The notes: generated by a model not told the origin, from the sequence alone. A DNA stretch of 63,666 nucleotides, filler included, from Octopus bimaculoides (GCF_001194135.2; 6 parts of 6 records of this genome joined end to end with filler, not necessarily neighbours in it); one strand, 5' to 3'; shown: positions 771 to 59,125, numbered from the whole stretch's first letter. Translations and numbers: made by a program.

Positions 771-2511
771 AATCAATTTGTTAGTTTGTTGTTTAGCTGC
801 AAGCTCAGCGCTTGAACTTTTATTTGATAAGTCTTAGATCTATAACCATCACATTTTATAGACAGTGTATCTAGGAATATGGTTTATTATTTTTTTTTAA
901 GTGGTTGTGTATGATTTGAGGGAAATTTTACTATTTCTGTAGCAGAATTATATAAAAGCTCTCTTACTAGTTTTCAAATATTTTCCTTGGTATATAGTTT
1001 CATATATTGTATGATTTTTTTTTCTCTGTATTTCTGTCATGTTTGTTTGCCATAAACTCACCGTTTATTAGTTTAGGACTTTCTTAAACTTTTCATTGTT
1101 GTTAATGCTGACCATTGTTTCTTTACTGAGTATTTTGAAGATTCTGGTTTATCATATTTGTCCTCTGTCAGCATGACCAGCATAGAATTGGTTAGATCTT
1201 GTTTATTGCTATTGGACCAGGCCTCTCTTTACAATTTATAAACTATAGTTTCTGTTGAAAGCCTTCACATACCTCTTTGCCCTCTTTCTTGTTTAGGTTT
1301 TCCCTTGTAGATATTCATTCAGGATAGGCACTAGTTGCATCAGTCTCTCTATTTTAGCTTTTAAAAAAACAAACAAACCCTCTCATAATCCTAAGGTAGA
1401 ATCTGTTAGGCAAACTGAGGTAAGTACAGTTACCTGCCTTACAAGACTTTGTTGTTGGATTCCGGTCCCTTGCTTTAAGATCAGTAATTAGTATTATCAT
1501 TATCACTGGATCATCGTGCCCTCCTATGTAAACATGTGCCTAGTGGCAAGCATGAGATTTTGAAAACCATGACCCATGGGTTCTTACTCATTCGACTTTT
1601 CCATTTCATCTCGGGCTCTGCAAAAAGTCATATGCTAGTCTTCCCTTCCGTATTTGGGTTTTCTATGGTGTAATTTTGAAGTGACTAGGTCACCTATTAC
1701 ATTACATCAGCTCTGTCTGAAATTATAAATTTTGTTTGTTTTTCAAATGTCAAGTTGGACAGCTGTGAGGTACATGTAGTTGCTGGTTGACTTTAAAAAC
1801 CTGTATTAAATTTAATCTTTATTAAAATAGCTTATAATTGAATCTTCTACTGTGGTAAGGTACCCAGTCATATGTGATACTTGTTACAAATATTTTGAAC
1901 TCCACTTGCAGTAGATATAGTATCAACTGGCTTTTGCATCAGCACTTAAAATGCTAAAATTGTTTCTCATGTTATTAAAACTTCCTGATGTATGAACTGA
2001 CCTTTGTATACATTTCCAAGTACAACATCAGCAATGGGGTGACACATTGCTGCTACTGAAGGCAGCAATATCTCACTTCATTGGATGAAGTTGGAGTATC
2101 ACCATAATAATTTTAGACAGCAAAAGAAAAAAAAAAACCTTTGGTATTTTTCATCTCTGCCAAATGATTTTTGATGATGGGTTTTTCATTGTAATTGTAG
2201 TGCAAATGGTTGAGAATTCCAGACATTTGTTCTTTTAATGTTCCTCAACATGATACTATATGTAATAAAGCTGACTGTTTGTGTGAGTGTGTGAGAGCTT
2301 TGATTTTATGCTCACTTTTTCATACTGGTCAGGTTAGGCCAAAACTTCTTGGAGTAGTAATCTGTGGTTGATATCTTTGCTGGTGCCGACCCTTGTTTTC
2401 ATCTAAGGTACTTTATTCTACTGATCTCTACACATTGAACAGGATGTTGTGTTTGGGAAGAGATGAAGAAATGTCACTGCTGCCCAAACAGCATACAGAA
2501 AAAACACACAT

Positions 2512-4236: not shown

Positions 4237-5609
4237 CTGTATTTGTAAAAGATAGTGCTAGATAGTAAACAGGTTTGGCACTGGTTTGCTGTTTTGCTGC
4301 TTGTAGAAATGCATGATGTGTGAATGAAAATTGTGTGCCTAAAACAGTCTCCTATTTCTCCAGATTGAATGAAATACCTGTAATATACTAGGAAGATCTA
4401 ATTTGGCAACATGCTCTTTTCACATGACAATAAAGGGTGTGATGGAGTATCTATCTCCTTATTGCAAGTTAGTTCTTCATAATATAATTTCTGAAAAGTT
4501 ATTGGGTAAAATGTTCATAAATGTATTGTACAGTAATATTACATTTATTGTAAACATAAACTGGAATAGTTCCCAAGAAAAATACCAAATTCAAGGTGTA
4601 CCTCTTTGGAATATTTTGAAAAGGATTTGTCAAAAATGTGTCATGAAAGTAAAAGGGTGGTGTGTGGCCATTTATCATATCAAGCAGGACTTACATACTG
4701 GTTTGGGTGTAAGTCGGAATGTACTGCATGGTAGTACAAGATGTGTTTTAGGTGGTAATATCTGCATATTCCACCTGTGACTTCATCTTTGCAGGAGTTC
4801 CAAGCACTACATTATCTAATATGTCCATTCTTTATTCAAGGCAATTTGAAGGTTACTTGGTTGTTATTTCTAGAGACCATGTAGAAAAGGTTCCTTGACG
4901 ACACACACACACACACACACACTAACGCGAGTTTAGAGGGATATGTTATCCAAGTAGACACTGTGGTAGCTCTCAGTTATGTTCCAGGTTATGGCTAACT
5001 GCATTGATTAGTATTTAACACCTATGACTTACTAGGAATTGTAACTCGTGCTGTAAATTTCTGTGCTCACTTCACTGGATGGTAATATTATCAGGAGTGT
5101 ATATTTCCCATAATTGTAGCAGAGAATATGGAGACTGATACATCCTCAAAATTTATTTCCTTTTATTTTACAATGTCATGCAGCATATTTTTATGGTTAT
5201 GACAAAAGAAAATAAAGTTTTGGGCATGTACCAGCCTCCATATTCTCTATTGTTATAATTATTGCGCACACACACACACACACACATACAGAGTCTGGTA
5301 TTGAATATAATCGTCTTTTAGAAGTTGGTTATTGTTGTCTTAGTACATATTTTGCTAAGAGTTTAACCTTTGCCATGTTTTTCTGTTTTTTTAAAAAATT
5401 TTTGGCTAAATTGTATTTGGGTTTGTAAATAGTATTTTCTTTACAATCCTCTCGAATCAAATTTGAAATAATTTTGGGAAAAAGAGTATCTTTAGTAAAT
5501 CCCCATTGTATAATAAAATATAGGAATGAATAGTTTTTTTAAAAAAGATTTATTTATATATAAAGGGTATGCTTATACTGTACTAATTTTCAAATTTTCT
5601 CTTTCTCAG

Positions 5610-5850
5610 GCTGGTTTGTGCCCACCTTTTCCTACTCAGTGTTGCGTCTAGCCTCCCAGGCAAAGCCGACCACTTTTGAAACCAGTTCTTCACACGGTTC
5701 TAATTACCCCTTCTCCCTTCATTGTCACAAGCCAGGCCAGTTTTACCCTTCCCTCTCACCACTGTAAACCAGACCATTCCTGGAAGGCCTGATGGCCAGA
5801 TTCCCCTTGTTGTTTGTAACTGCATTATCTGCGGCTCTCTTTCTACCACC
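5610..5850 (+). other. Candidate unproductive (poison) cassette or alternative exon of the RS-domain gene; 3' boundary uncertain
   Basis: Strong acceptor ttttctctttctcag|G at 5609/5610. Non-repetitive, C-rich and visibly higher in GC than the flanks. Stops in all three frames (TAG 5649, TGA 5677 in the phase-2 frame, TAA 5765). Lies 780-1000 nt upstream of an RS exon. No strong donor identified. Confidence 0.45.
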
Positions 5851-5876
5851 GTGTTCAAATCTTGTTTTTTTTTTTT

Positions 5877-6040
5877 TAACTCCAGGTTAGCCTCGACACA
5901 GCAGACCTATGACAAAAGGTGTTCCAGCTGCAATTATTCCATGTTTTGGTATATTAGGGGCTACATAATACATTGTATACATTATTTTTTTAAGACAAGA
6001 GCATGATATCAGAGATTTCACTGCTATTTCTAGCAAGTTG
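5877..6040 (+). repeat. Unclassified short dispersed repeat, family E (about 170-200 bp)
   Basis: Shares modules TAACYCCAGGTYAGCC...GCAGACCTATGA...TTCCAGC and GATTTGAGGGAGATTTGGCTGCTATTTCTAGCA with copies near 800-945, 4790-4885, 10445-10605, 20835-21000, 50045-50115 and 63555-63620. Confidence 0.65.
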
Positions 6041-6124
6041 ATTGATAAGTGTAGTATGGTGTTAGCAATAAAATAGGAGTTAATAGTTAAAGCTAGGATC
6101 CTGTCTTGTATGGATTAAGGCCAA

Positions 6125-6293
6125 GTCTTAGCCTCATATGTTCTGAGTTGAAATCCTGCTGAGGTAACCTTTGCCTTTCATCTTTTTTTGGTTCAGTAAA
6201 ATGAAGTACCAGTCAAGTACTGAGGGTTCAATGTAATTGACTTGTCCCTCCCATCCTGAAAAATTGCTGACCTTGTGGCATAATTAGAATTAT
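6125..6293 (+). mobile_element. Decayed SINE family B
   Basis: gttctgagttgaaatcctgctgaggtaacctttgcctttcatc...aaaatgaagtaccag...aattgctgaccttgtg matches copy 33079-33250. Confidence 0.75.
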
Positions 6294-6629
6294 TGTAAAA
6301 CACCTAACTTTACTGCTCTTCCTCTCCCTATTTAACTCCTAAAAAAGATGACAGTCCTACACATAAAACTGTCCTGTGTCATCCAATATGGACACACTAT
6401 AGGGCTTCAGTTCTAGCTGGGTTTTGAACTAGAGGAATTCTGACAGTATGTTTTGATACTTCTGAAGCTCTCATTAAAACTGTTTCAATTTTTATAAAAA
6501 AAACCCCAAAACTCCCCCATCTTCTTAATGCATGGTTAAATCACCATCGTATATTGTTGCTTCTTTGTCTTCCATCTCTCTTTTGGTGGTTTTTGCTCTA
6601 CTAATGGCACCCAAATTGTTGCTTTTCAG

Positions 6630-6689
6630 ACGTCGGAAGAGCCGAAGTTCTAGCCGCAGTCGGAGTACAAGTCCTGTAAAGCACCGAAG
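6630..6689 (+). CDS. Internal coding exon of an RS-domain (SR or SR-related) splicing factor: (R)RRKSRSSSRSRSTSPVKHR(R)
   Basis: Acceptor gttgcttttcag|A and donor AAG|gtaggt. 60 nt, symmetric phase 2-2, open, RS-dipeptide rich. It keeps several CpG codons (CGT, CGG, CGA, CGC) in an otherwise CpG-poor region. The exact paralog cannot be named from one exon. Confidence 0.85.
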
Positions 6690-7053
6690 GTAGGTGAATT
6701 TTGTCCTTTTCTTGGCTGGCTTTTTGTTGTCCGATTTTTGAGTGTGTGTGTGTCACCAGCAAGGTAACCAGATTCCCCCCATCTTTTTTTTTTTTTTGTC
6801 TTGTTTCATCAACCATGTACACTCTCCGTTTCTCTCTATTTCTACTTCTTTCTGAGAGAGGAGAGGAGATTGAGAGAAAAATCATGATGTGTGTGTGTGT
6901 GTACATGTGTTGATGTATTGTGTTTGTTTTCAAAATATTTGTATATTACTTAAATTGATGAGAGGACAAAAATGAAGAAAAGAAAAAAAAAGATTTCACT
7001 AATTGGTGAATGTTAAGACATTTTGTCTTGTTTGTTTCATTCTGTCCTTTCAG

Positions 7054-9968: not shown

Positions 9969-10157
9969 CTTTGTGTGTCTGTGTTTGTCCCCCCACCATC
10001 GCTTGACAACCGATGCTGGTGTGTTTACGTCCCCGTAACTTAGCGGTTCGGCAAAAGAGACTGGTAGAATAAGTCCTGGGGTCGATTTTCTCGATTAAAG
10101 GCGGTGCTCCAGCATGGCCGCAGTCAAATGACTGAAACAAGTAAGAGTGTAAAAGAG
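9832..10157 (+). mobile_element. SINE family A, well preserved (5' end lost in gap)
   Basis: Near-identical to the reverse complement of 50260-50658, including the 3' end GACTGAAACAAGTAA. Confidence 0.9.
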
Positions 10158-10974: not shown

Positions 10975-12183
10975 AATAAGAGTAGCCTGGGCAAAGTTTA
11001 GAGAGCTCTTACCTCTGCTGGTGACAAAGGGCCTCTCACTCAGAGTAAAAGGCAGACTGTATGACGCATGTGTACGAACAGCCATGCTACATGGCAGTGA
11101 AACATGGGCCGTGACTGCTGAGGACATGCGTAAGCTCGCAAGAAACGAAGCCAGTATGCTCCGCTGGATGTGTAATGTCAGTGTGCATACCCGTCAGAGT
11201 GTAAGTATCTTGAGAGAAAAGCTGAACATTAGAAGCATCAGTTGTGGTGTGCAAGAGAGACGATTGCGCTGGTATGGACATGTGGTGAGAATGGATGAGG
11301 ATAGCTGCGTGAAAAAGTGCCACACCCTAGCAATTGAGGGAACCTGTGGAACAGGTAGACCCAGGAAGACCTGGGATGAGGTGGTGAAGCACGACCTTCG
11401 AATTTTAGGCCTCACTGAGGCAATGACCAGNNNNNNNNNNNNNNNNNNNNNNNNNNNNNNNNNNNNNNNNNNNNNNNNNNNNNNNNNNNNNNNNNNNNNN
11501 NNNNNNNNNNNNNNNNNNNNNNNNNNNNNNNNNNNNNNNNNNNNNNNNNNNNNNNNNNNNNNNNNNNNNNNNNNNNNNNNNNNNNNNNNNNNNNNNNNNN
11601 NNNNNNNNNNNNNNNNNNNAAAAACTCTGCTTGCAAAGACCTGTTGAGGCAAGTGAATTTGAAATCTTAAATCGAAATCGAACCGAATCCGACGTCTAGC
11701 ACCCATGCCAACCTCTCCTTCATTGGACAATAAACTCTGCTTGCGAAGGCCTGTTGGGGCAAGTGAAATCGAAATCGTAATTGAACCATACTCGATGACT
11801 GGCACCTGCGCCAGTGGAGCTCTTACAGCACTGTTCGAGCGTGTTCATTGCCAGAGCAGCTGCCTGGATTCCGTAGCACCATTTGAGCGTAATCGTTACC
11901 AGCGTTGCCTTCTAGCACTTGTGTTGGTGGCATGTTAGAAAATCATTCAAGCGAGGTCATTGCCAGTNNNNNNNNNNCACTTGTGTTGGTGGCATGTTAG
12001 AAAATCATTCAAGCGAGGTCATTGCCAGTGCCGCTAGACTGGCTCCCGTGCAGGTGGCACGTAAAAAACACCAGTTTGAGTGTGGCTGCTGCCAGTACAA
12101 TGTGACTGGCCCTCGTGCCGGTGGCATGTAAAAGCACCCACTACACTCTTGGAGTGCTTGGTGTCAGGAAGGGCAGCCAGCTG

Positions 12184-12185
<2 letters not shown>
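10975..12185 (+). mobile_element. 5'-truncated RTE-clade LINE (RT C-terminal region plus modular 3' UTR; N gaps inside)
   Basis: 10975-11430 translates to ..KGRLYDACVRTAMLHGSETW..EASMLRWMCNVS..RRLRWYGHVVRM..GRPRKTWDEVVKHDL, the typical RTE/BovB ORF end. The 3' UTR matches the reverse complement of 21253-21466. Confidence 0.92.
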
Positions 12186-12218
<33 letters not shown>

Positions 12219-12287
12219 ATATAGATATAGATGTATATATATATGTGTGTATATAGATATAGATGTATATATAGATGTATATATATA

Positions 12288-12323
<36 letters not shown>

Positions 12324-12650
12324 TGTATATATAGATTTATGTATATATATGTATGGATATATATGTATATAGATCTATAAATATATAGATGTATATATAT
12401 AGATGTATGTATGTGTGGCCTGTTTGTTTGTTGTACCTTGTTTATCGTTTTGTCCATGTTCTTTTGCAACGTCATGTACTCAGATATGTATCTATATATA
12501 CATGTAGATGAAGGTATGTACATACNNNNNNNNNNATCTATATATACATGTAGATGAAGGTATGTACATACATGTACATATATATGCATATACTCATATA
12601 TTGTTTATATATATATATATATATATATAGATATATATATATATATACAT
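12185..12650. repeat. (TA)n / (TAGATG/TATA)n compound microsatellite
   Basis: Direct inspection. Confidence 0.95.
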
Positions 12651-13033
12651 ATGTAACGGTTATAGAATTGCACGATGAAGATCAATTTTTATAAGAAAAT
12701 ATTTATTTATGCCGTTACATTCTAGGTTGCCATACCACGACGGGTAGGCCAGTGTAATAGTATATAAAACATACAAGGTTGAGAATGTAGGCCTGTATCT
12801 GTATGTTCCTTTTATAGCAGTAATTGTATAGAGGGAGAGATGGTAGGGTTATAATGTTNNNNNNNNNNNNNNNNNNNNNNNNNNNNNNNNNNNNNNNNNN
12901 NNNNNNNNNNNNNNNNNNNNNNNNNNNNNNNNNNNNNNNNNNNNNNNNNNNNNNNNNNTGTATATATATATATATGAGTGTGTATATATATATGTATATA
13001 TATATATAGATGTATATATATATACATATATAT

Positions 13034-13239
13034 GAGCGTGGCCGCTGCCAGTACCGCCTGACTGGCTTTCATAGGATTTTTGAGTGAGATCATTGCCAGT
13101 GCCCCTGGACTGGCTCTTGTGCGGGTGGCACATAAAAGACACCATTTTGAGTTTGGCCGTTGCCAGTACCGCCTGACTGGCCTCCGTGCGGGTGACACAT
13201 AAAAGCACCCACTACACTCTCTGAGTGGTTGGCGTTGAA
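13034..13239 (+). mobile_element. RTE LINE 3' UTR fragment
   Basis: gccagtaccgcctgactggc repeat units and aaaagcacccactacactctctgagtggttggcgtt, as at 12030-12185. Confidence 0.85.
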
Positions 13240-21903: not shown

Positions 21904-21954
21904 AGTTTCATCTGTGACTTGCTTAGCTCATGCCAGCAAAAACATATAGCAAAG
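21904..21954 (+). other. Candidate 51-nt exon (phase 0 open: SFICDLLSSCQQKHIAK)
   Basis: Acceptor ttgtttttttcattgcag| and donor AAG|gtacga; unique sequence; no recognised homology. Confidence 0.3.
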
Positions 21955-22157
21955 GTACGACTCTAAATACCGCTCACCCTGGCTGACTGGAACATATTTT
22001 TTGTGTTGTTTTTTTTTTTCTTTTCATTTTTCATTTTCATTTTTTTCCCCTCTGTCCACCATCTCATTTTATTTGTAGCGATCACCATTGTTGTCAACTG
22101 AATCGAACACCATACTCATAAGACATGTACATGAGTGTAGGGATGTGTGTGTATGCC

Positions 22158-22199
<42 letters not shown>

Positions 22200-22200
<1 letters not shown>

Positions 22201-23061
22201 CAATAAGTATCCGGATTGTTGCCATAGTAGCAAAGCTAGAATATGCCGAGTTAAGCTGTGTGGCATAGATTGACTTTGAACTCTGCTGTGTCTGTGCATT
22301 AAGTTTTAATGTTGTAGTTCACTTCTGCTGTTTACAGCAGTGCTTGGAAGTAACGTGTGTAATGTGTAATCGTTGCATTGATCTTGATAGAGAAAGCTGA
22401 GCAGAGAATTTGCATCAAAGTTTGCCAAAAGCTTGATGATTGCTGCTCAGAGGCCTATGCAAAGTTTTCATCATAATTGACAGAATGAAGATCTTGTACA
22501 ACTGAAATCCGAGTGTCTTTTTGGTCAGCTGAAAGTAGTTTTGGCATAAATTTGGCAGACACGCTTCTCCTACTCTGATCTTCAGTGATAATGGACTCAA
22601 CTGAACAATAACTAATCAACGCACCCTCTGATAACTCACAGATGGTGATTTGACGACTTACCCCCACAGCTACATGCATGTCTGATAAGTTTTCTTCGGT
22701 TCTGCTGGTTGTGGGCCTCCCAGAACGTTCGTCACTGTGGACCTTTTTTCGGCCATTTTGGAAACGTCTGACCCACTCCTATGCTTGTGTGTGACCCATA
22801 CACTCCTCTCCATACACTTTCTGCAACTTTGCGTAGGCCTCTGAGCAGGCATCACCACGACAACTGTTTCTGTTGTGGTCAATCCGACGATCATGCGTTA
22901 ATTCCAAGCACTGCTGTAAACGAGAAGTGAGCGAAGAACGTTAAAACTTGCTGTGCTTGCACAGCAGAAGTCAAGATCAATCTCTGCCAAGTGGCTTTTC
23001 TCTGCATGCTTTAGCTTTGTTACTATGGCAACAGCCTGGGTATTTATTGATTACACCTCGT
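22200..23061. mobile_element. Rearranged mariner with two 5' ends in inverted orientation (fold-back derivative)
   Basis: The minus strand encodes the transposase N-terminus (AEAYAKLQKVYGEECMGHTQA*EWVRRFQNGRKK..SGRPTTSRTEEN..SAKFMPKLL..DENF). The plus strand at 22200-22468 repeats the 5' UTR and EKAEQRICIKVCQKL. The arms are about 250-bp inverted repeats. Confidence 0.85.
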
Positions 23062-24400: not shown

Positions 24401-24559
24401 AGCTGCCTGGTGTAACGTCATCACCTAGTACATTGGGTGCCCTTTGCATATTCCTTTGTTGCAAACATTCGAGCCAAGTCTCTGGTGTGAGGATATTTTC
24501 CTCCTTCCTCCCAGACTCAGAGGCCTTGTAAAGAGTTATGATGACCTACAGGTTCTTGG

Positions 24560-57779: not shown

Positions 57780-58419
57780 CAGCAGCAGTAGTAGCAGCAG
57801 TAGCAGCAGCAGTAGTAGTAGTTGAAGTAGTAATAGTAGTAGTAGCAGCAGTAGTAGTAGTAATAATAGGAGGAGGGTTAATAGTAATATTAGGATTTGG
57901 AGTAACGGTAGTAGTAGTAGCATTACTAATGTTAGCTATTATTATTTGTAGTAATATTACTGTTGCTATTATTATTAGCATTAAGATATAAGCTGATGCA
58001 TTACATGGCAAAATCCTTGAAGTTTTAAAGTATTATAATACAACATTTGCTGCAGAGAAAATCTAGTTGTTGTATATAGAAGACAATATGTAGGATTATA
58101 CAAGGTTTTCTGTCGTTCTGTCGGATTGCAACGTCAACTATGTTACTTCAGCAGGTGAGTAACACGTGTAACATTCCTGTGGCCTTTGGATTTAAACTGC
58201 ACCACATTGTTGCATGGTTTTCCTTGATCTCTGTTGCAAACGCAAACATTATATGTACGTGCATGCACACAAACGTATACGAACACAGGTGTACGCACAC
58301 ACGAATACACACACTTTCACAGATGCCTGACTACATGCGCCAATAGCAGACAACATTTTCACATACATACACAGACACGGGCAAAAGCATTGACATAAAT
58401 TTATTTACTTATATGTTGT

Positions 58420-59125
58420 TGTGGCGTATGGTAGTGTTGGTGTGCTGTAAGGCAGTGTTGGTGTAGTGTATGCTAGAGTTCGTGTAGTGTATGGTAGTGT
58501 TGGTGTGGTGTATTGTAGTGTTCNNNNNNNNNNGTGTATGGTAGTGTTGGTGTGGTGTATTGTAGTGTTCGTGTGGTGTATTGTAGTGTTGGTGTGCTGT
58601 ATGGCAACGTTAGTTTTGTGTATGAATGTGTTGGTGCTGTTTATGGTAGTGTTAGTGTTGTGTACGGAAGTCTTGGTGTGGTGTATGTTAGTTTTTGTTG
58701 GATTATTTTAGTGATGGTGCGGTGTAGTGTATAGTAGTTTGATGTGGCCTATGGCAGTTTGTTGTATTGTGTGTTGTATTATAATGTTGTGGTGTAAGTT
58801 AGTGTTGGTGTGCTTTATGGTAATATTGTTGTGGCATTTCTTACTTTTATTTTAGTGGATGGTAGTGTTGCTGTGGTATATGGTAGTTTTGGTGTGGTTT
58901 ATAGTAGTGTTGATGTAGTGTATCGTAGTGCTGATGTGGGTGTATTGTAATGTTAGTGTGGTATATAGTAATTTTGGCGTGGTGTGTGCTAGTGTTTGTG
59001 GGCTGTATCGGTGTGTGCTGTGTCGGTGTGTGCTGTGTCGATGTGTGCTGTGTCGGTGTTGCGTATATAATTTTGGTGTGGTGCATGGTAGTGTGTTAGC
59101 GTGTATTATAGTGTTGGTGTAGTGA
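58420..59125 (-). repeat. Same 21-bp minisatellite in inverted orientation
   Basis: tatggtagtgttggtgtggtg units are the reverse complement of the 56040-56705 unit. Confidence 0.9.

What the first reader, a model, noticed from the sequence alone, without database searches (positions are those of the whole stretch)
5610..5850. Candidate autoregulatory poison exon in a cephalopod SR-protein gene
Seen: strong acceptor; a unique, C-rich island with CUUC/UCUUCAC/CUCUC motifs; stops in all frames (phase-2 frame ends LVCAHLFLLSVASSLPGKADHF*); located just upstream of a small symmetric phase-2 RS exon. Established: vertebrate SR genes such as SRSF3 and SRSF7 autoregulate through conserved PTC-containing exons next to small phase-2 RS exons, and Drosophila Rbp1 uses alternative 3' splice sites for the same purpose. 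Inference: this is the equivalent AS-NMD element in Octopus. The donor site is not obvious.
Basis: partly seen in the sequence, partly recalled or inferred. Interest (0 to 1): 0.7.

Follow-up and report, generated by a model that had tools for sequence, protein, structure and literature searches.

The report
Octopus RBM39 intron: unverified poison-exon candidate
The flagged C-rich stretch lies in an intron of the octopus RBM39 splicing-factor gene and looks like an exon, but nothing shows that it is used, and the poison exon of this gene that does have transcript and conservation support is a different 51-base exon 16 kb downstream.

Summary
Position 5610 follows a strong 3' splice site. 5610-5850 is the most C-rich 241-nt stretch in the 95-kb locus (34% C against 17%), is single-copy, and has stops in all frames. 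It lies 780 nt upstream of a real 60-nt RS coding exon (6630-6689).

The host is not an SRSF gene. It is Octopus bimaculoides LOC106879945, the 5' part of the RBM39/CAPER ortholog, an RS-domain splicing factor known to autoregulate through a poison exon in human.

The flagged island sits in a 34-kb intron. Nothing shows that it is spliced:
- Gene models skip it.
- It has no homology to the vertebrate RBM39 poison exon, nor to the stop-carrying insertions that two other lophotrochozoan RBM39 transcripts carry at this junction.
- Splice-site pairs of this strength are as common on the antisense strand.

A transcript from a distant cephalopod (Logan SRR5253657) does reveal a poison exon in the window, at 21904-21954. 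It is 51 nt, has an in-frame TAG, and is 94% identical between the two species, against 75-83% for the coding exons and 50% at third codon positions.

Verdict: the type of gene and the type of mechanism are right, but the flagged element is unverified, with about 0.25-0.3 probability of being a lineage-specific poison exon. RNA-seq junction reads would decide.

The parts
5610..5885 (+). Flagged C-rich island, read as a candidate 276-nt cassette exon with an in-frame TGA at 5676-5678. Unverified: it is either a pseudo-exon or a lineage-specific poison exon.
   Evidence: Acceptor rank 16/3051 and donor CAG|GUUAGC rank 50/3065. C content 34% against 17%. Single-copy in 95 kb. In-silico inclusion gives ...KERRLVCAHLFLLSVASSLPGKADHF*. 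No transcript, gene-model or cross-species support.
5581..5587 (+). UACUAAU branch-point consensus match 24 nt upstream of the 5610 exon start.
   Evidence: Read directly from the sequence.
5612..5618 (+). UGGUUUG, a match to the human RBM39 RRM2 consensus N(G/U)NUUUG, 2 nt inside the candidate exon.
   Evidence: The base rate is 7.5% of all AG sites in the window, so the evidence is weak. In human the functional site lies upstream of the AG (PMC10477243).
5886..5918 (+). Candidate 33-nt in-frame micro-exon (adds LASTQQTYDK, no stop) behind a U13 tract. Alternatively it is the 3' end of a 309-nt exon 5610-5918. Unverified.
   Evidence: Acceptor rank 9/10,648 in the locus and donor rank 1034/10,757. 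Translation. The peptide is absent from the protein database and from the cephalopod mRNA.
6630..6689 (+). Constitutive 60-nt RS-domain coding exon of the RBM39 ortholog (RRKSRSSSRSRSTSPVKHR, phase 2-2).
   Evidence: Exact match to P0001 / A0A0L8G0I0 and to XP_052834102-105. Orthologous exon in L001 252-311 with identical amino acids and 78% nucleotide identity.
21904..21954 (+). 51-nt cassette exon with an in-frame TAG (RVSSVTCLAHASKNI*). This is the conserved poison exon of this gene.
   Evidence: Included as a 50-nt frameshifting exon in the cephalopod transcript L001 312-361. 48 of 51 positions are identical, against 75-83% in coding exons and 50% at third codon positions; P about 1e-11 under the neutral rate. 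Acceptor rank 101 and donor rank 114 in the locus. Single-copy.
1297..1419 (+). Rival candidate 123-nt cassette in the same intron, with stronger splice sites than the flagged one and an in-frame stop (FSLVDIHSG*). Unverified.
   Evidence: Acceptor rank 19/10,648 and donor GAG|GUAAGU rank 8/10,757. Single-copy with no similarity to the L001 or L002 insertions. Translation.

Best explanation
The window is part of Octopus bimaculoides LOC106879945, the 5' portion of the RBM39/CAPER-alpha ortholog. RBM39 is a U2AF65-related splicing factor with an N-terminal RS domain.

The coding exons are:
- exon A (MADDFDVEAMLEAPYRKE), upstream of the window;
- exon B (DDVVKTDGRADKER-), upstream of the window;
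- the 60-nt RS exon at window 6630-6689;
- the rest of the gene, beyond the window.

The flagged island lies in the last 1 kb of the 34-kb intron between exon B and the RS exon.

The gene very probably is controlled by alternative splicing coupled to nonsense-mediated decay, as human RBM39 is. The exon that has evidence for this role is the 51-nt cassette at 21904-21954. Including it places a TAG 15 codons after the RS exon, far upstream of many later exon junctions. Its sequence is held almost invariant between octopus and a cephalopod so distant that third codon positions are 50% diverged.

The flagged island is most likely not this gene's conserved AS-NMD element. It is a single-copy, compositionally odd piece of intron that happens to carry good splice-like signals (a pseudo-exon, possibly an old insertion). 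At best it is a second, octopus-lineage-specific stop-containing cassette.

Shown: host gene identity, exon map, reality of the RS exon, inclusion of the 51-nt exon in a related species, its nucleotide-level constraint, and the composition and uniqueness of the island.

Inferred: NMD sensitivity, autoregulation by RBM39 protein, and non-use of the island.
For: Host identity:
- A profile search returned A0A0L8G0I0_OCTBM, MADDFDVEAMLEAPYRKEDDVVKTDGRADKERRRRKSRSSSRSRSTSPVKHRR.
- The same N-terminus occurs in proteins named 'RNA binding motif protein 39b'.
- The Logan contig L001 encodes a 590-aa protein with two RRM_1 domains and RBM39linker once two insertions are removed.

Locus map: the window equals L004 51754-78842 (CM046630.1). 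Exon A is at L004 10001-10054, exon B at 24408-24451 and the RS exon at 58383-58442.

The 51-nt exon:
- L001 312-361 aligns to window 21904-21954.
- 94% identity, against 75-83% for coding exons and 50% at third positions; binomial P about 1e-11.
- In-frame TAG.
- Unique in the locus.

Against use of the island:
- Both gene models skip it.
- It has no similarity above shuffled controls to L001's 77-nt insertion, L002's 124-nt insertion or the fish RBM39 poison exon.
- Acceptor-donor pairs at least this strong and 50-400 nt apart number 4 on the sense strand (5 with the flagged pair, which sits exactly on the rounded cut-offs) and 4 on the antisense strand of the 95-kb locus.
- A better-scoring stop-containing candidate exists 4 kb upstream in the same intron.
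- At 276 nt it is far longer than the 50-124-nt unproductive exons seen in this gene family.

Known biology: human RBM39 exon 2b autoregulation (PMC10477243).
Against: - The island is the single most extreme C-rich stretch in 95 kb, and its boundary coincides to the base with a top-ranked acceptor that has a consensus branch point. That is not what a random pseudo-exon looks like.
- It is single-copy with no transposon hallmarks.
- The stop-carrying insertions at this junction are not conserved between L001 and L002 either. Fast turnover at this position is therefore plausible, and lack of homology is weak evidence against use.
- The vertebrate RBM39 poison exon is also C/U-rich in its 5' half.
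- UGGUUUG fits the RBM39 RRM2 consensus right at the 3' splice site.
- No octopus RNA-seq could be examined, and gene models routinely omit NMD isoforms.
- The conservation argument for the 51-nt exon rests on one transcript contig from a species I could not name.
Confidence: 0.55

Rival explanations
1. The reader is essentially right about the element. 5610-5885 (or 5610-5918) is a genuine, octopus-lineage-specific poison cassette of RBM39. When RBM39 protein is abundant it binds at the 3' splice site (UGGUUUG at +3, CUCUUUC upstream), helps recruit U2 snRNP and includes the exon. The TGA at 5676 then triggers NMD. This would work alongside the conserved 51-nt exon.
For: - Strong acceptor, branch point and usable donor.
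- Extreme C-rich composition starting exactly at the AG.
- Single-copy.
- The stop codon lies 207 nt upstream of the exon's 3' junction.
- The same junction carries stop-containing insertions in L001 and in L002/L003, and their sequences are not conserved with each other, so lineage-specific exons here are precedented.
- RRM2-consensus heptamer at the splice site (PMC10477243).
- The fish RBM39 poison exon is also C/U-rich.
Against: - No transcript or model evidence.
- No homology to any known insertion.
- Comparable splice-site pairs are as frequent on the antisense strand.
- The heptamer has a 7.5% base rate and lies on the wrong side of the AG compared with human.
- The exon would be 2-5 times longer than the family's known unproductive exons.
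Confidence: 0.27
2. The island is not an exon but an intronic C/U-rich regulatory platform, for example for PTB- or PCBP-type proteins. It would tune use of the weak acceptor of the RS exon 780 nt downstream, or of the U13-preceded 33-nt candidate micro-exon at 5886-5918.
For: - C/U-rich composition with UCUU and CUCUCU motifs.
- The RS exon acceptor is only rank 408 of 10,648.
- A very strong acceptor at 5886 follows the island directly, and the 33-nt segment is open in the correct phase.
Against: - Motif counts are what the base composition predicts.
- The LASTQQTYDK peptide is absent from every protein found and from the cephalopod mRNA.
- The 5918 donor is weak.
- No conservation data are available.
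Confidence: 0.1
3. 5610 and 5886 are alternative 3' splice sites of one exon ending at 5918. The distal site would give a productive 33-nt insertion and the proximal site a 309-nt stop-containing form, similar to the alternative-3'-splice-site mechanism the reader cited for Drosophila Rbp1.
For: Two top-ranked acceptors lie 276 nt apart, a multiple of three. Both share one possible donor, and only the long form carries stops.
Against: - The donor at 5918 is weak.
- U-tract acceptors arise easily in this T-rich genome.
- No protein or transcript has the 11-residue insertion.
Confidence: 0.08

Closest known systems
Human/vertebrate RBM39 poison exon 2b (also called exon 3), autoregulated by RBM39 itself (Campagne et al. 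2023, PMC10477243; Pervouchine et al. 2019, PMC6547761)
   Same: Orthologous gene. A short cassette in the N-terminal RS-coding region makes the mRNA unproductive when included. The 51-nt octopus exon shows the same hallmark of nucleotide conservation above that of neighbouring coding exons. The flagged island shares only C/U-rich composition and one RRM2-consensus heptamer.
   Different: - The vertebrate exon lies in the intron directly after the MADD...APYRK exon (fish contig L005 1432-1507). The flagged island is one intron further downstream and the 51-nt exon two introns further.
- No sequence similarity to either octopus element, or anywhere in the 95-kb locus.
- The human RRM2 site lies immediately upstream of the AG. 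The 51-nt exon has no N(G/U)NUUUG heptamer within 60 nt of its acceptor, and the island has one inside the exon.
SRSF3 exon 4 and SRSF7 poison exons
   Same: Stop-containing cassette within or next to RS-domain-coding exons of an RS-domain splicing regulator. C/U-rich motifs.
   Different: The host is not an SRSF family member, so SRSF3-type CNUC/CUUC binding logic has no particular claim here.
Turnover of unproductive splicing events among SR paralogs and orthologs (Lareau and Brenner 2015, PMC4379411)
   Same: The same gene family keeps AS-NMD regulation while the actual exon and intron used differ between lineages. That is what vertebrate exon 2b, the cephalopod 51-nt exon and the L001/L002 insertions suggest for RBM39.
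   Different: That study covered SRSF4/5/6, not RBM39 and not molluscs. Here the NMD sensitivity is inferred, not measured.
Drosophila caper (RBM39 ortholog) isoforms containing premature stop codons (PMC10332324)
   Same: Invertebrate RBM39 ortholog with annotated poison-exon isoforms. The protein binds its own mRNA.
   Different: Homology of the exons to the octopus ones was not examined. The regulation in fly is a proposal, not a demonstration.

Membership tests
SRSF3/SRSF7-type SR-gene poison exon | Host gene is a canonical SR protein (N-terminal SRSF-type RRM, C-terminal RS domain) | tested here: not met
   tblastn with SRSF1/2/3/7 (sequences written from memory) finds only the RS exon. 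The host N-terminus is MADDFDVEAMLEAPY followed directly by the RS domain. The cephalopod ortholog has RRM_1 twice plus RBM39linker.
RBM39 autoregulatory poison exon (vertebrate exon 2b type) | Host gene is an RBM39 ortholog | tested here: met
   (hits named RNA binding motif protein 39b).
RBM39 autoregulatory poison exon (vertebrate exon 2b type) | Located in the intron homologous to vertebrate intron 2 (right after the MADD...APY(K/R)K exon) | tested here: not met
   The fish exon follows ...APYRK| by 175 nt. The flagged island lies between exon B and the RS exon, and the 51-nt exon lies after the RS exon.
RBM39 autoregulatory poison exon (vertebrate exon 2b type) | Sequence homology to the ultraconserved vertebrate exon | tested here: not met
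   Smith-Waterman alignment of the 76-nt fish exon against the island scores 18, with a shuffled mean of 18.0. The best hit in the 95-kb locus scores 33, with a null mean of 30.7 and maximum of 38.
RBM39 autoregulatory poison exon (vertebrate exon 2b type) | RRM2 site N(G/U)NUUUG immediately upstream of the AG of the 3' splice site | tested here: not met
   Island: CUCUUUC upstream (final G replaced by C), and UGGUUUG at +3 to +9 inside the exon. 51-nt exon: none within 60 nt. The base rate of a heptamer near any AG is 7.5%.
Poison (AS-NMD) cassette exon in general | Inclusion introduces a premature stop more than 50-55 nt upstream of a later exon junction | tested here: met
   In-silico splicing. 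The island has a TGA at 5676-5678, 207 nt before its 3' end. The 51-nt exon has a TAG 6 nt before its end, but many downstream junctions follow (L001 coding sequence continues for 1.6 kb).
Poison (AS-NMD) cassette exon in general | Exon is actually included in some mature transcripts | tested here: inconclusive
   Flagged island: no database protein ends in its peptide. A simulation shows such a protein would have been reported. However, the database evidently holds no octopus RNA-seq-derived products for this gene, and RNA-seq reads cannot be searched here. 51-nt exon: included in Logan contig L001 of a related species.
Poison (AS-NMD) cassette exon in general | Nucleotide conservation across species above neutral or intron background | tested here: inconclusive
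   Flagged island: no second cephalopod genome is reachable with these tools, and there is no counterpart in the L001 mRNA. 51-nt exon: met, at 94% against 50% at third positions.
Poison (AS-NMD) cassette exon in general | Isoform stabilised when NMD is blocked; inclusion responds to the level of the host protein | not testable with these tools
   Requires experiments or NMD-inhibition RNA-seq.
Transposable-element fragment | Multiple copies, terminal repeats or target-site duplication, or transposon protein similarity | tested here: not met
   Single copy in the window and in 95 kb, while 20% of the window is intra-locus repeat. No significant flanking repeats. No Pfam hit for its reading frames. 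Genome-wide copy number was not testable.

The most novel reading that the evidence does not exclude
Cephalopod RBM39 is controlled by at least two poison exons, neither homologous to the vertebrate exon 2b. One is an ancient, near-invariant 51-nt exon after the first RS exon. The other is a young, octopus-specific 276-nt C-rich exon at 5610-5885 in the preceding intron, which has converged on the C/U-rich composition and RRM2-type heptamer of the vertebrate exon. This would make RBM39 a clear case of repeated, independent invention of autoregulatory poison exons in different introns of one gene across bilaterians.
Probability: 0.22. Interest if true: 0.5.

Novelty: new member of a known kind. 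Interest (0 to 1): 0.3.

Why it matters
Poison-exon autoregulation of splicing factors is well established in vertebrates, and for RBM39 it is a drug-relevant mechanism in human. How old these circuits are, and whether the exons themselves are inherited or repeatedly reinvented, is known for only a few SR genes.

This locus shows that the octopus RBM39 ortholog carries a strongly constrained stop-containing exon in a different intron from the vertebrate one. That fits the 'same regulation, different exon' turnover model and extends it to molluscs.

The flagged island would add a second, lineage-specific example if RNA-seq confirms it. If not, it is a useful warning that sequence-only nomination of poison exons picks pseudo-exons: a better-scoring rival sits 4 kb away in the same intron.

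The work also shows that RefSeq LOC106879945 ('uncharacterized protein') is a truncated RBM39 model.

Tried and rejected
- tblastn of human SRSF1/2/3/7 (sequences from memory) found no RRM in the window, so the SRSF identity was rejected.
- Scans for further RS-rich or phase-compatible exons in the window found none convincing downstream of the RS exon other than the 51-nt exon.
- Exact look-ups of window ORFs 6532-6693 and 5722-6006 found nothing on record.
- A composite three-frame query of the island found no protein at E<=10. A local HMMER simulation showed this search could not have seen the RS exon but would have seen a product ending in the island's peptide.
This was solved with a profile built from 8 identical 53-aa sequences.
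- Rfam gave only microsatellite-driven mir-297 noise and nothing at the island. ARAGORN found no tRNA.
- RNA folding of the island and of the 51-nt exon is not different from shuffles, with z = -0.47 and +0.53.
- Similarity between L002's 124-nt insertion and the cephalopod 51-nt exon looked suggestive by eye but is not significant (p = 0.04-0.28), so homology was not claimed.
- Two metagenome scans for exact 22-23-mers of the 51-nt exon and of the island gave 0 hits.
- I tried to name the species of SRR5253657 from the literature, with no hit.
- My initial impression that 6080-6290 is a SINE was not supported by intra-locus repeat mapping and was dropped.
- A 9-nt direct repeat at 5504 and 5971 is within chance expectation, so it was not taken as a target-site duplication.

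Full report
**What is in the sequence**

Position 5610 follows uuuucucuuucucag, with a UACUAAU branch-point match at 5581-5587. On a simple position-weight-matrix (PWM) splice-site score, scored against the window's own base composition, this acceptor ranks 16th of 3051 AG sites on both strands of the window. It ranks 39th of 10,648 in the 95-kb locus.

From exactly that base the composition jumps. 5610-5850 is 34% C and 50.6% G+C, while the preceding 300 nt are 10% C and the locus mean is 16.9% C (sd 4.7). Only 0.02% of 241-nt windows in the locus are as C-rich.

The CUUC, UCUUCAC and CUCUC motifs are present, at frequencies that this composition explains. All three frames carry stops, and the phase-2 frame reads LVCAHLFLLSVASSLPGKADHF*. 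Stops in all frames are expected for any intron stretch of this length.

The segment has no second copy in the window or in 95 kb around it, although 20% of the window is made of intra-locus repeats. It has no flanking repeats beyond chance, no Rfam or tRNA match, no Pfam match in its open frames and no unusual RNA fold.

The best is CAG|GUUAGC at 5885/5886 (rank 50 of 3065), which gives a 276-nt exon. A weaker AAG|GUGUUC follows at 5918/5919.

**Identifying the host gene**

The window contains no SRSF-type RRM and only one RS-rich stretch, the 60-nt segment at 6630-6689. A 20-residue RS peptide is too short and too biased for the protein search. Local HMMER tests showed that an exact match would score E about 14-120 and go unreported.

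A profile built from eight identical copies of a 53-residue string raises the information per position enough. The string joined the island peptide, the micro-exon peptide and the RS peptide. That search returned a single protein, UniProt A0A0L8G0I0 of Octopus bimaculoides: MADDFDVEAMLEAPYRKEDDVVKTDGRADKERRRRKSRSSSRSRSTSPVKHRR.

The N-terminus is that of RBM39/CAPER-alpha. From memory, human RBM39 begins MADDIDIEAMLEAPYKK. Searching with this protein found fish proteins named 'RNA binding motif protein 39b' with the same first 17 residues. Its cluster also holds RefSeq XP_052834102-105, 'uncharacterized protein LOC106879945', 125 aa.

Through that protein I obtained 95,270 nt of chromosome CM046630.1 as locus L004. 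The window is L004 51754-78842 at 100% identity.

**Exon map**

| Element | L004 coordinates | Notes |
|---|---|---|
| Exon A | coding part 10001-10054 | MADD...RKE |
| Exon B | 24408-24451 | DDVVKTDGRADKER- |
| RS exon | 58383-58442 | window 6630-6689 |
| RefSeq terminal coding exon | 85049-85270 | no resemblance to RBM39 |

The intron holding the flagged island is 33,931 nt long, of which 1,827 nt are assembly gaps. The host is thus an RS-domain splicing factor, but not an SR-family (SRSF) gene.

**Transcript evidence from relatives**

The same search returned a 49-aa product (P0002) from Logan contig SRR5253657_3559 (L001, 2330 nt). L001 is a polyadenylated RBM39 mRNA. Its layout is:
- exon A;
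- exon B;
- a 77-nt insertion with an in-frame TGA (175-251);
- the RS exon (252-311), with amino acids identical to octopus and 78% nucleotide identity;
- a 50-nt insertion (312-361);
- the rest of the RS domain, two RRMs, the RBM39 linker and the C-terminal domain.

Removing the two insertions restores one 590-aa RBM39 reading frame (Pfam).

Third codon positions of exon A and the RS exon differ at 19 of 38 sites between L001 and octopus. The source is therefore a deeply diverged cephalopod. I could not name the species.

Two further Logan contigs (L002 and L003, from two independent runs of another lophotrochozoan) carry a 124-nt insertion with an immediate TAG at the equivalent junction. 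Unproductive splicing around the first RS-coding exons of RBM39 is therefore recurrent outside vertebrates.

**The poison exon that has support**

L001's 50-nt insertion aligns to window 21904-21954. In octopus this is a 51-nt segment with an acceptor uuuuuuucauugcag|A (rank 101 of 10,648) and a donor AAG|GUACGA (rank 114 of 10,757). It is unique in the locus.

Spliced after the RS exon, it reads RVSSVTCLAHASKNI followed by TAG. In L001 the 50-nt version shifts the frame, which closes at 796-798 inside the RRM1-coding region.

It is identical at 48 of 51 aligned positions. The coding exons are 83%, 75% and 78% identical, and third positions are 50% identical. The chance of three or fewer differences in 51 nt at the third-position rate is about 1e-11.

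Nucleotide-level constraint stronger than in the adjoining coding exons, together with an in-frame stop and observed inclusion, is the signature of a regulated poison exon. NMD sensitivity and control by RBM39 itself are inferred from the human precedent, not shown.

**Is the flagged island such an exon?**

Arguments for:
- The acceptor, branch point and donor are good.
- The composition boundary falls exactly at the AG.
- It is single-copy.
- The TGA lies 207 nt before the putative 3' junction.
- UGGUUUG at 5612-5618 fits the human RBM39 RRM2 consensus N(G/U)NUUUG (PMC10477243).
- The fish RBM39 poison exon is also C/U-rich.
- Relatives show stop-carrying insertions at this same junction.

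Arguments against:
- Neither gene model includes it.
- No database product ends in its peptide. Such a product would have been detectable, but the database evidently lacks octopus RNA-seq products for this gene, so this counts for little.
- It has no similarity above shuffled controls to L001's 77-nt insertion, L002's 124-nt insertion or the fish exon.
- Acceptor-donor pairs at least this strong and 50-400 nt apart number 4 on the sense strand (5 with the flagged pair, which sits exactly on the rounded cut-offs) and 4 on the antisense strand of the locus. The splice-site argument is therefore at background level.
- The RRM2 heptamer occurs near 7.5% of all AG sites, and here it is on the exon side, unlike in human.
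- At 276 nt it is 2-5 times longer than the unproductive exons documented for this family.
- A rival stop-containing candidate at 1297-1419 in the same intron has clearly better sites, with acceptor rank 19 and donor GAG|GUAAGU rank 8.

L001's 77-nt exon has no counterpart in the sequenced parts of the octopus locus between exon A and the RS exon (L004 9001-58400), about 5% of the exon B-RS intron being assembly gap. Exons at this junction are therefore either lineage-specific or noise. This cuts both ways.

I put the probability that 5610-5885 (or 5610-5918) is a real lineage-specific poison exon at about 0.25-0.3.

Two minor alternatives remain open. The island could be an intronic C/U-rich regulatory platform. 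Or it could be the proximal member of a pair of alternative 3' splice sites, with the very strong U13-preceded acceptor at 5886 opening a 33-nt in-frame micro-exon (LASTQQTYDK).

**Comparison with what is known**

Human RBM39 includes poison exon 2b in response to its own protein. RRM2 binds CUCUUUG just upstream of the AG, and a stem-loop masks the 5' splice site (PMC10477243). That exon is 98.6% identical between human and Xenopus (PMC6547761). Drosophila caper has annotated isoforms with premature stops, and the protein binds its own mRNA (PMC10332324).

From a fish genomic contig (L005) I read the vertebrate exon at 1432-1507. It is 76 nt long and lies 175 nt after the ...APYRK exon. It is preceded by cucucuuuauag and contains AUCUUUG. 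Its translation matches product P0042, which carries the exon.

It lies in the intron equivalent to octopus intron A-B, so neither octopus element is positionally homologous to it. It also has no sequence match anywhere in the 95-kb octopus locus.

The picture fits the turnover model that Lareau and Brenner described for SRSF4/5/6 (PMC4379411). The regulation is kept while the exon used changes. The cephalopod 51-nt exon is a new member of a known kind. The flagged island would be another member if it is confirmed.

**Verdict**

- Observation: confirmed.
- Interpretation: partly supported. It is right that this is an RS-domain splicing-factor gene with AS-NMD next to the small RS exon. It is wrong about the gene family and unproven for the flagged element, which is probably not the conserved regulatory exon.
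- Interest: modest. The mechanism is established, the flagged element lacks evidence, and the solid by-product (a deeply conserved, non-homologous RBM39 poison exon in cephalopods, plus a mis-annotated RefSeq gene) is incremental.

Noticed in passing
window 21904-21954 (+): A 51-nt exon with an in-frame TAG, 94% identical to a 50-nt frameshifting exon included in a distant cephalopod's RBM39 mRNA. It is far more conserved than the neighbouring coding exons, and is the best-supported poison exon of this gene.
   Followed up: yes
window 1297-1419 (+): A 123-nt single-copy segment with near-top splice sites (acceptor rank 19 of 10,648, donor GAG|GUAAGU rank 8 of 10,757) and an in-frame stop in the RBM39 phase. 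As a candidate cassette it is at least as good as the flagged one.
   Followed up: partly
window 5886-5918 (+): A 33-nt segment behind a U13 tract and the 9th-best acceptor in the locus. It is open in the correct phase (LASTQQTYDK), so it could be a micro-exon or the tail of a 309-nt exon. No protein or transcript carries it.
   Followed up: partly
L001 175-251; L002 238-361 and the same in L003: RBM39 transcripts of a distant cephalopod and of another lophotrochozoan carry 77-nt and 124-nt stop-containing insertions between the exon-B equivalent and the RS domain. Both insertions begin with GU, so they could be extensions from alternative 5' splice sites rather than cassettes. They are not similar to each other or to anything in the octopus locus.
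   Followed up: partly
L004 10001-85270 (CM046630.1 2,452,060-2,527,329): RefSeq LOC106879945 'uncharacterized protein' (125 aa, four identical products) is the truncated 5' end of RBM39 joined to a terminal exon (L004 85049-85270) with no RBM39 similarity. The rest of the RS domain and the RRMs are not within the 95 kb, which points to an annotation or assembly problem, or to very long introns. UniProt A0A0L8G0I0 ends by reading through the RS-exon donor into the intron.
   Followed up: partly
L005 1432-1507: The fish rbm39 poison exon was read from a genomic Logan contig. It is 76 nt long and lies 175 nt after the first coding exon. Its 3' splice site is cucucuuuauag and it has an internal AUCUUUG, matching the two cis elements described for human. 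Product P0042 is a transcript that includes it.
   Followed up: partly
window 22143-23061, with a copy at L004 44428-44920: A repeated element (77% identical copy in the upstream intron) whose minus strand has a 107-aa open frame that looked transposase-like to me. Pfam gave no hit.
   Followed up: no
L004 10302: A strong GU donor lies 248 nt downstream of exon A's normal donor, so it could be an alternative 5' splice site in the intron that is positionally equivalent to the vertebrate poison-exon intron.
   Followed up: no
window 12150-13050 and 22135-22205: The Rfam mir-297/mir-1277 matches all fall on TA/TG microsatellites and are far below the gathering score, so they are artefacts of low complexity.
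   Followed up: no
protein collection, cluster of L001:750-1976: The 409-aa RBM39 product is clustered with unrelated 53-aa fragments named CDC20. This looks like a database clustering artefact.
   Followed up: no
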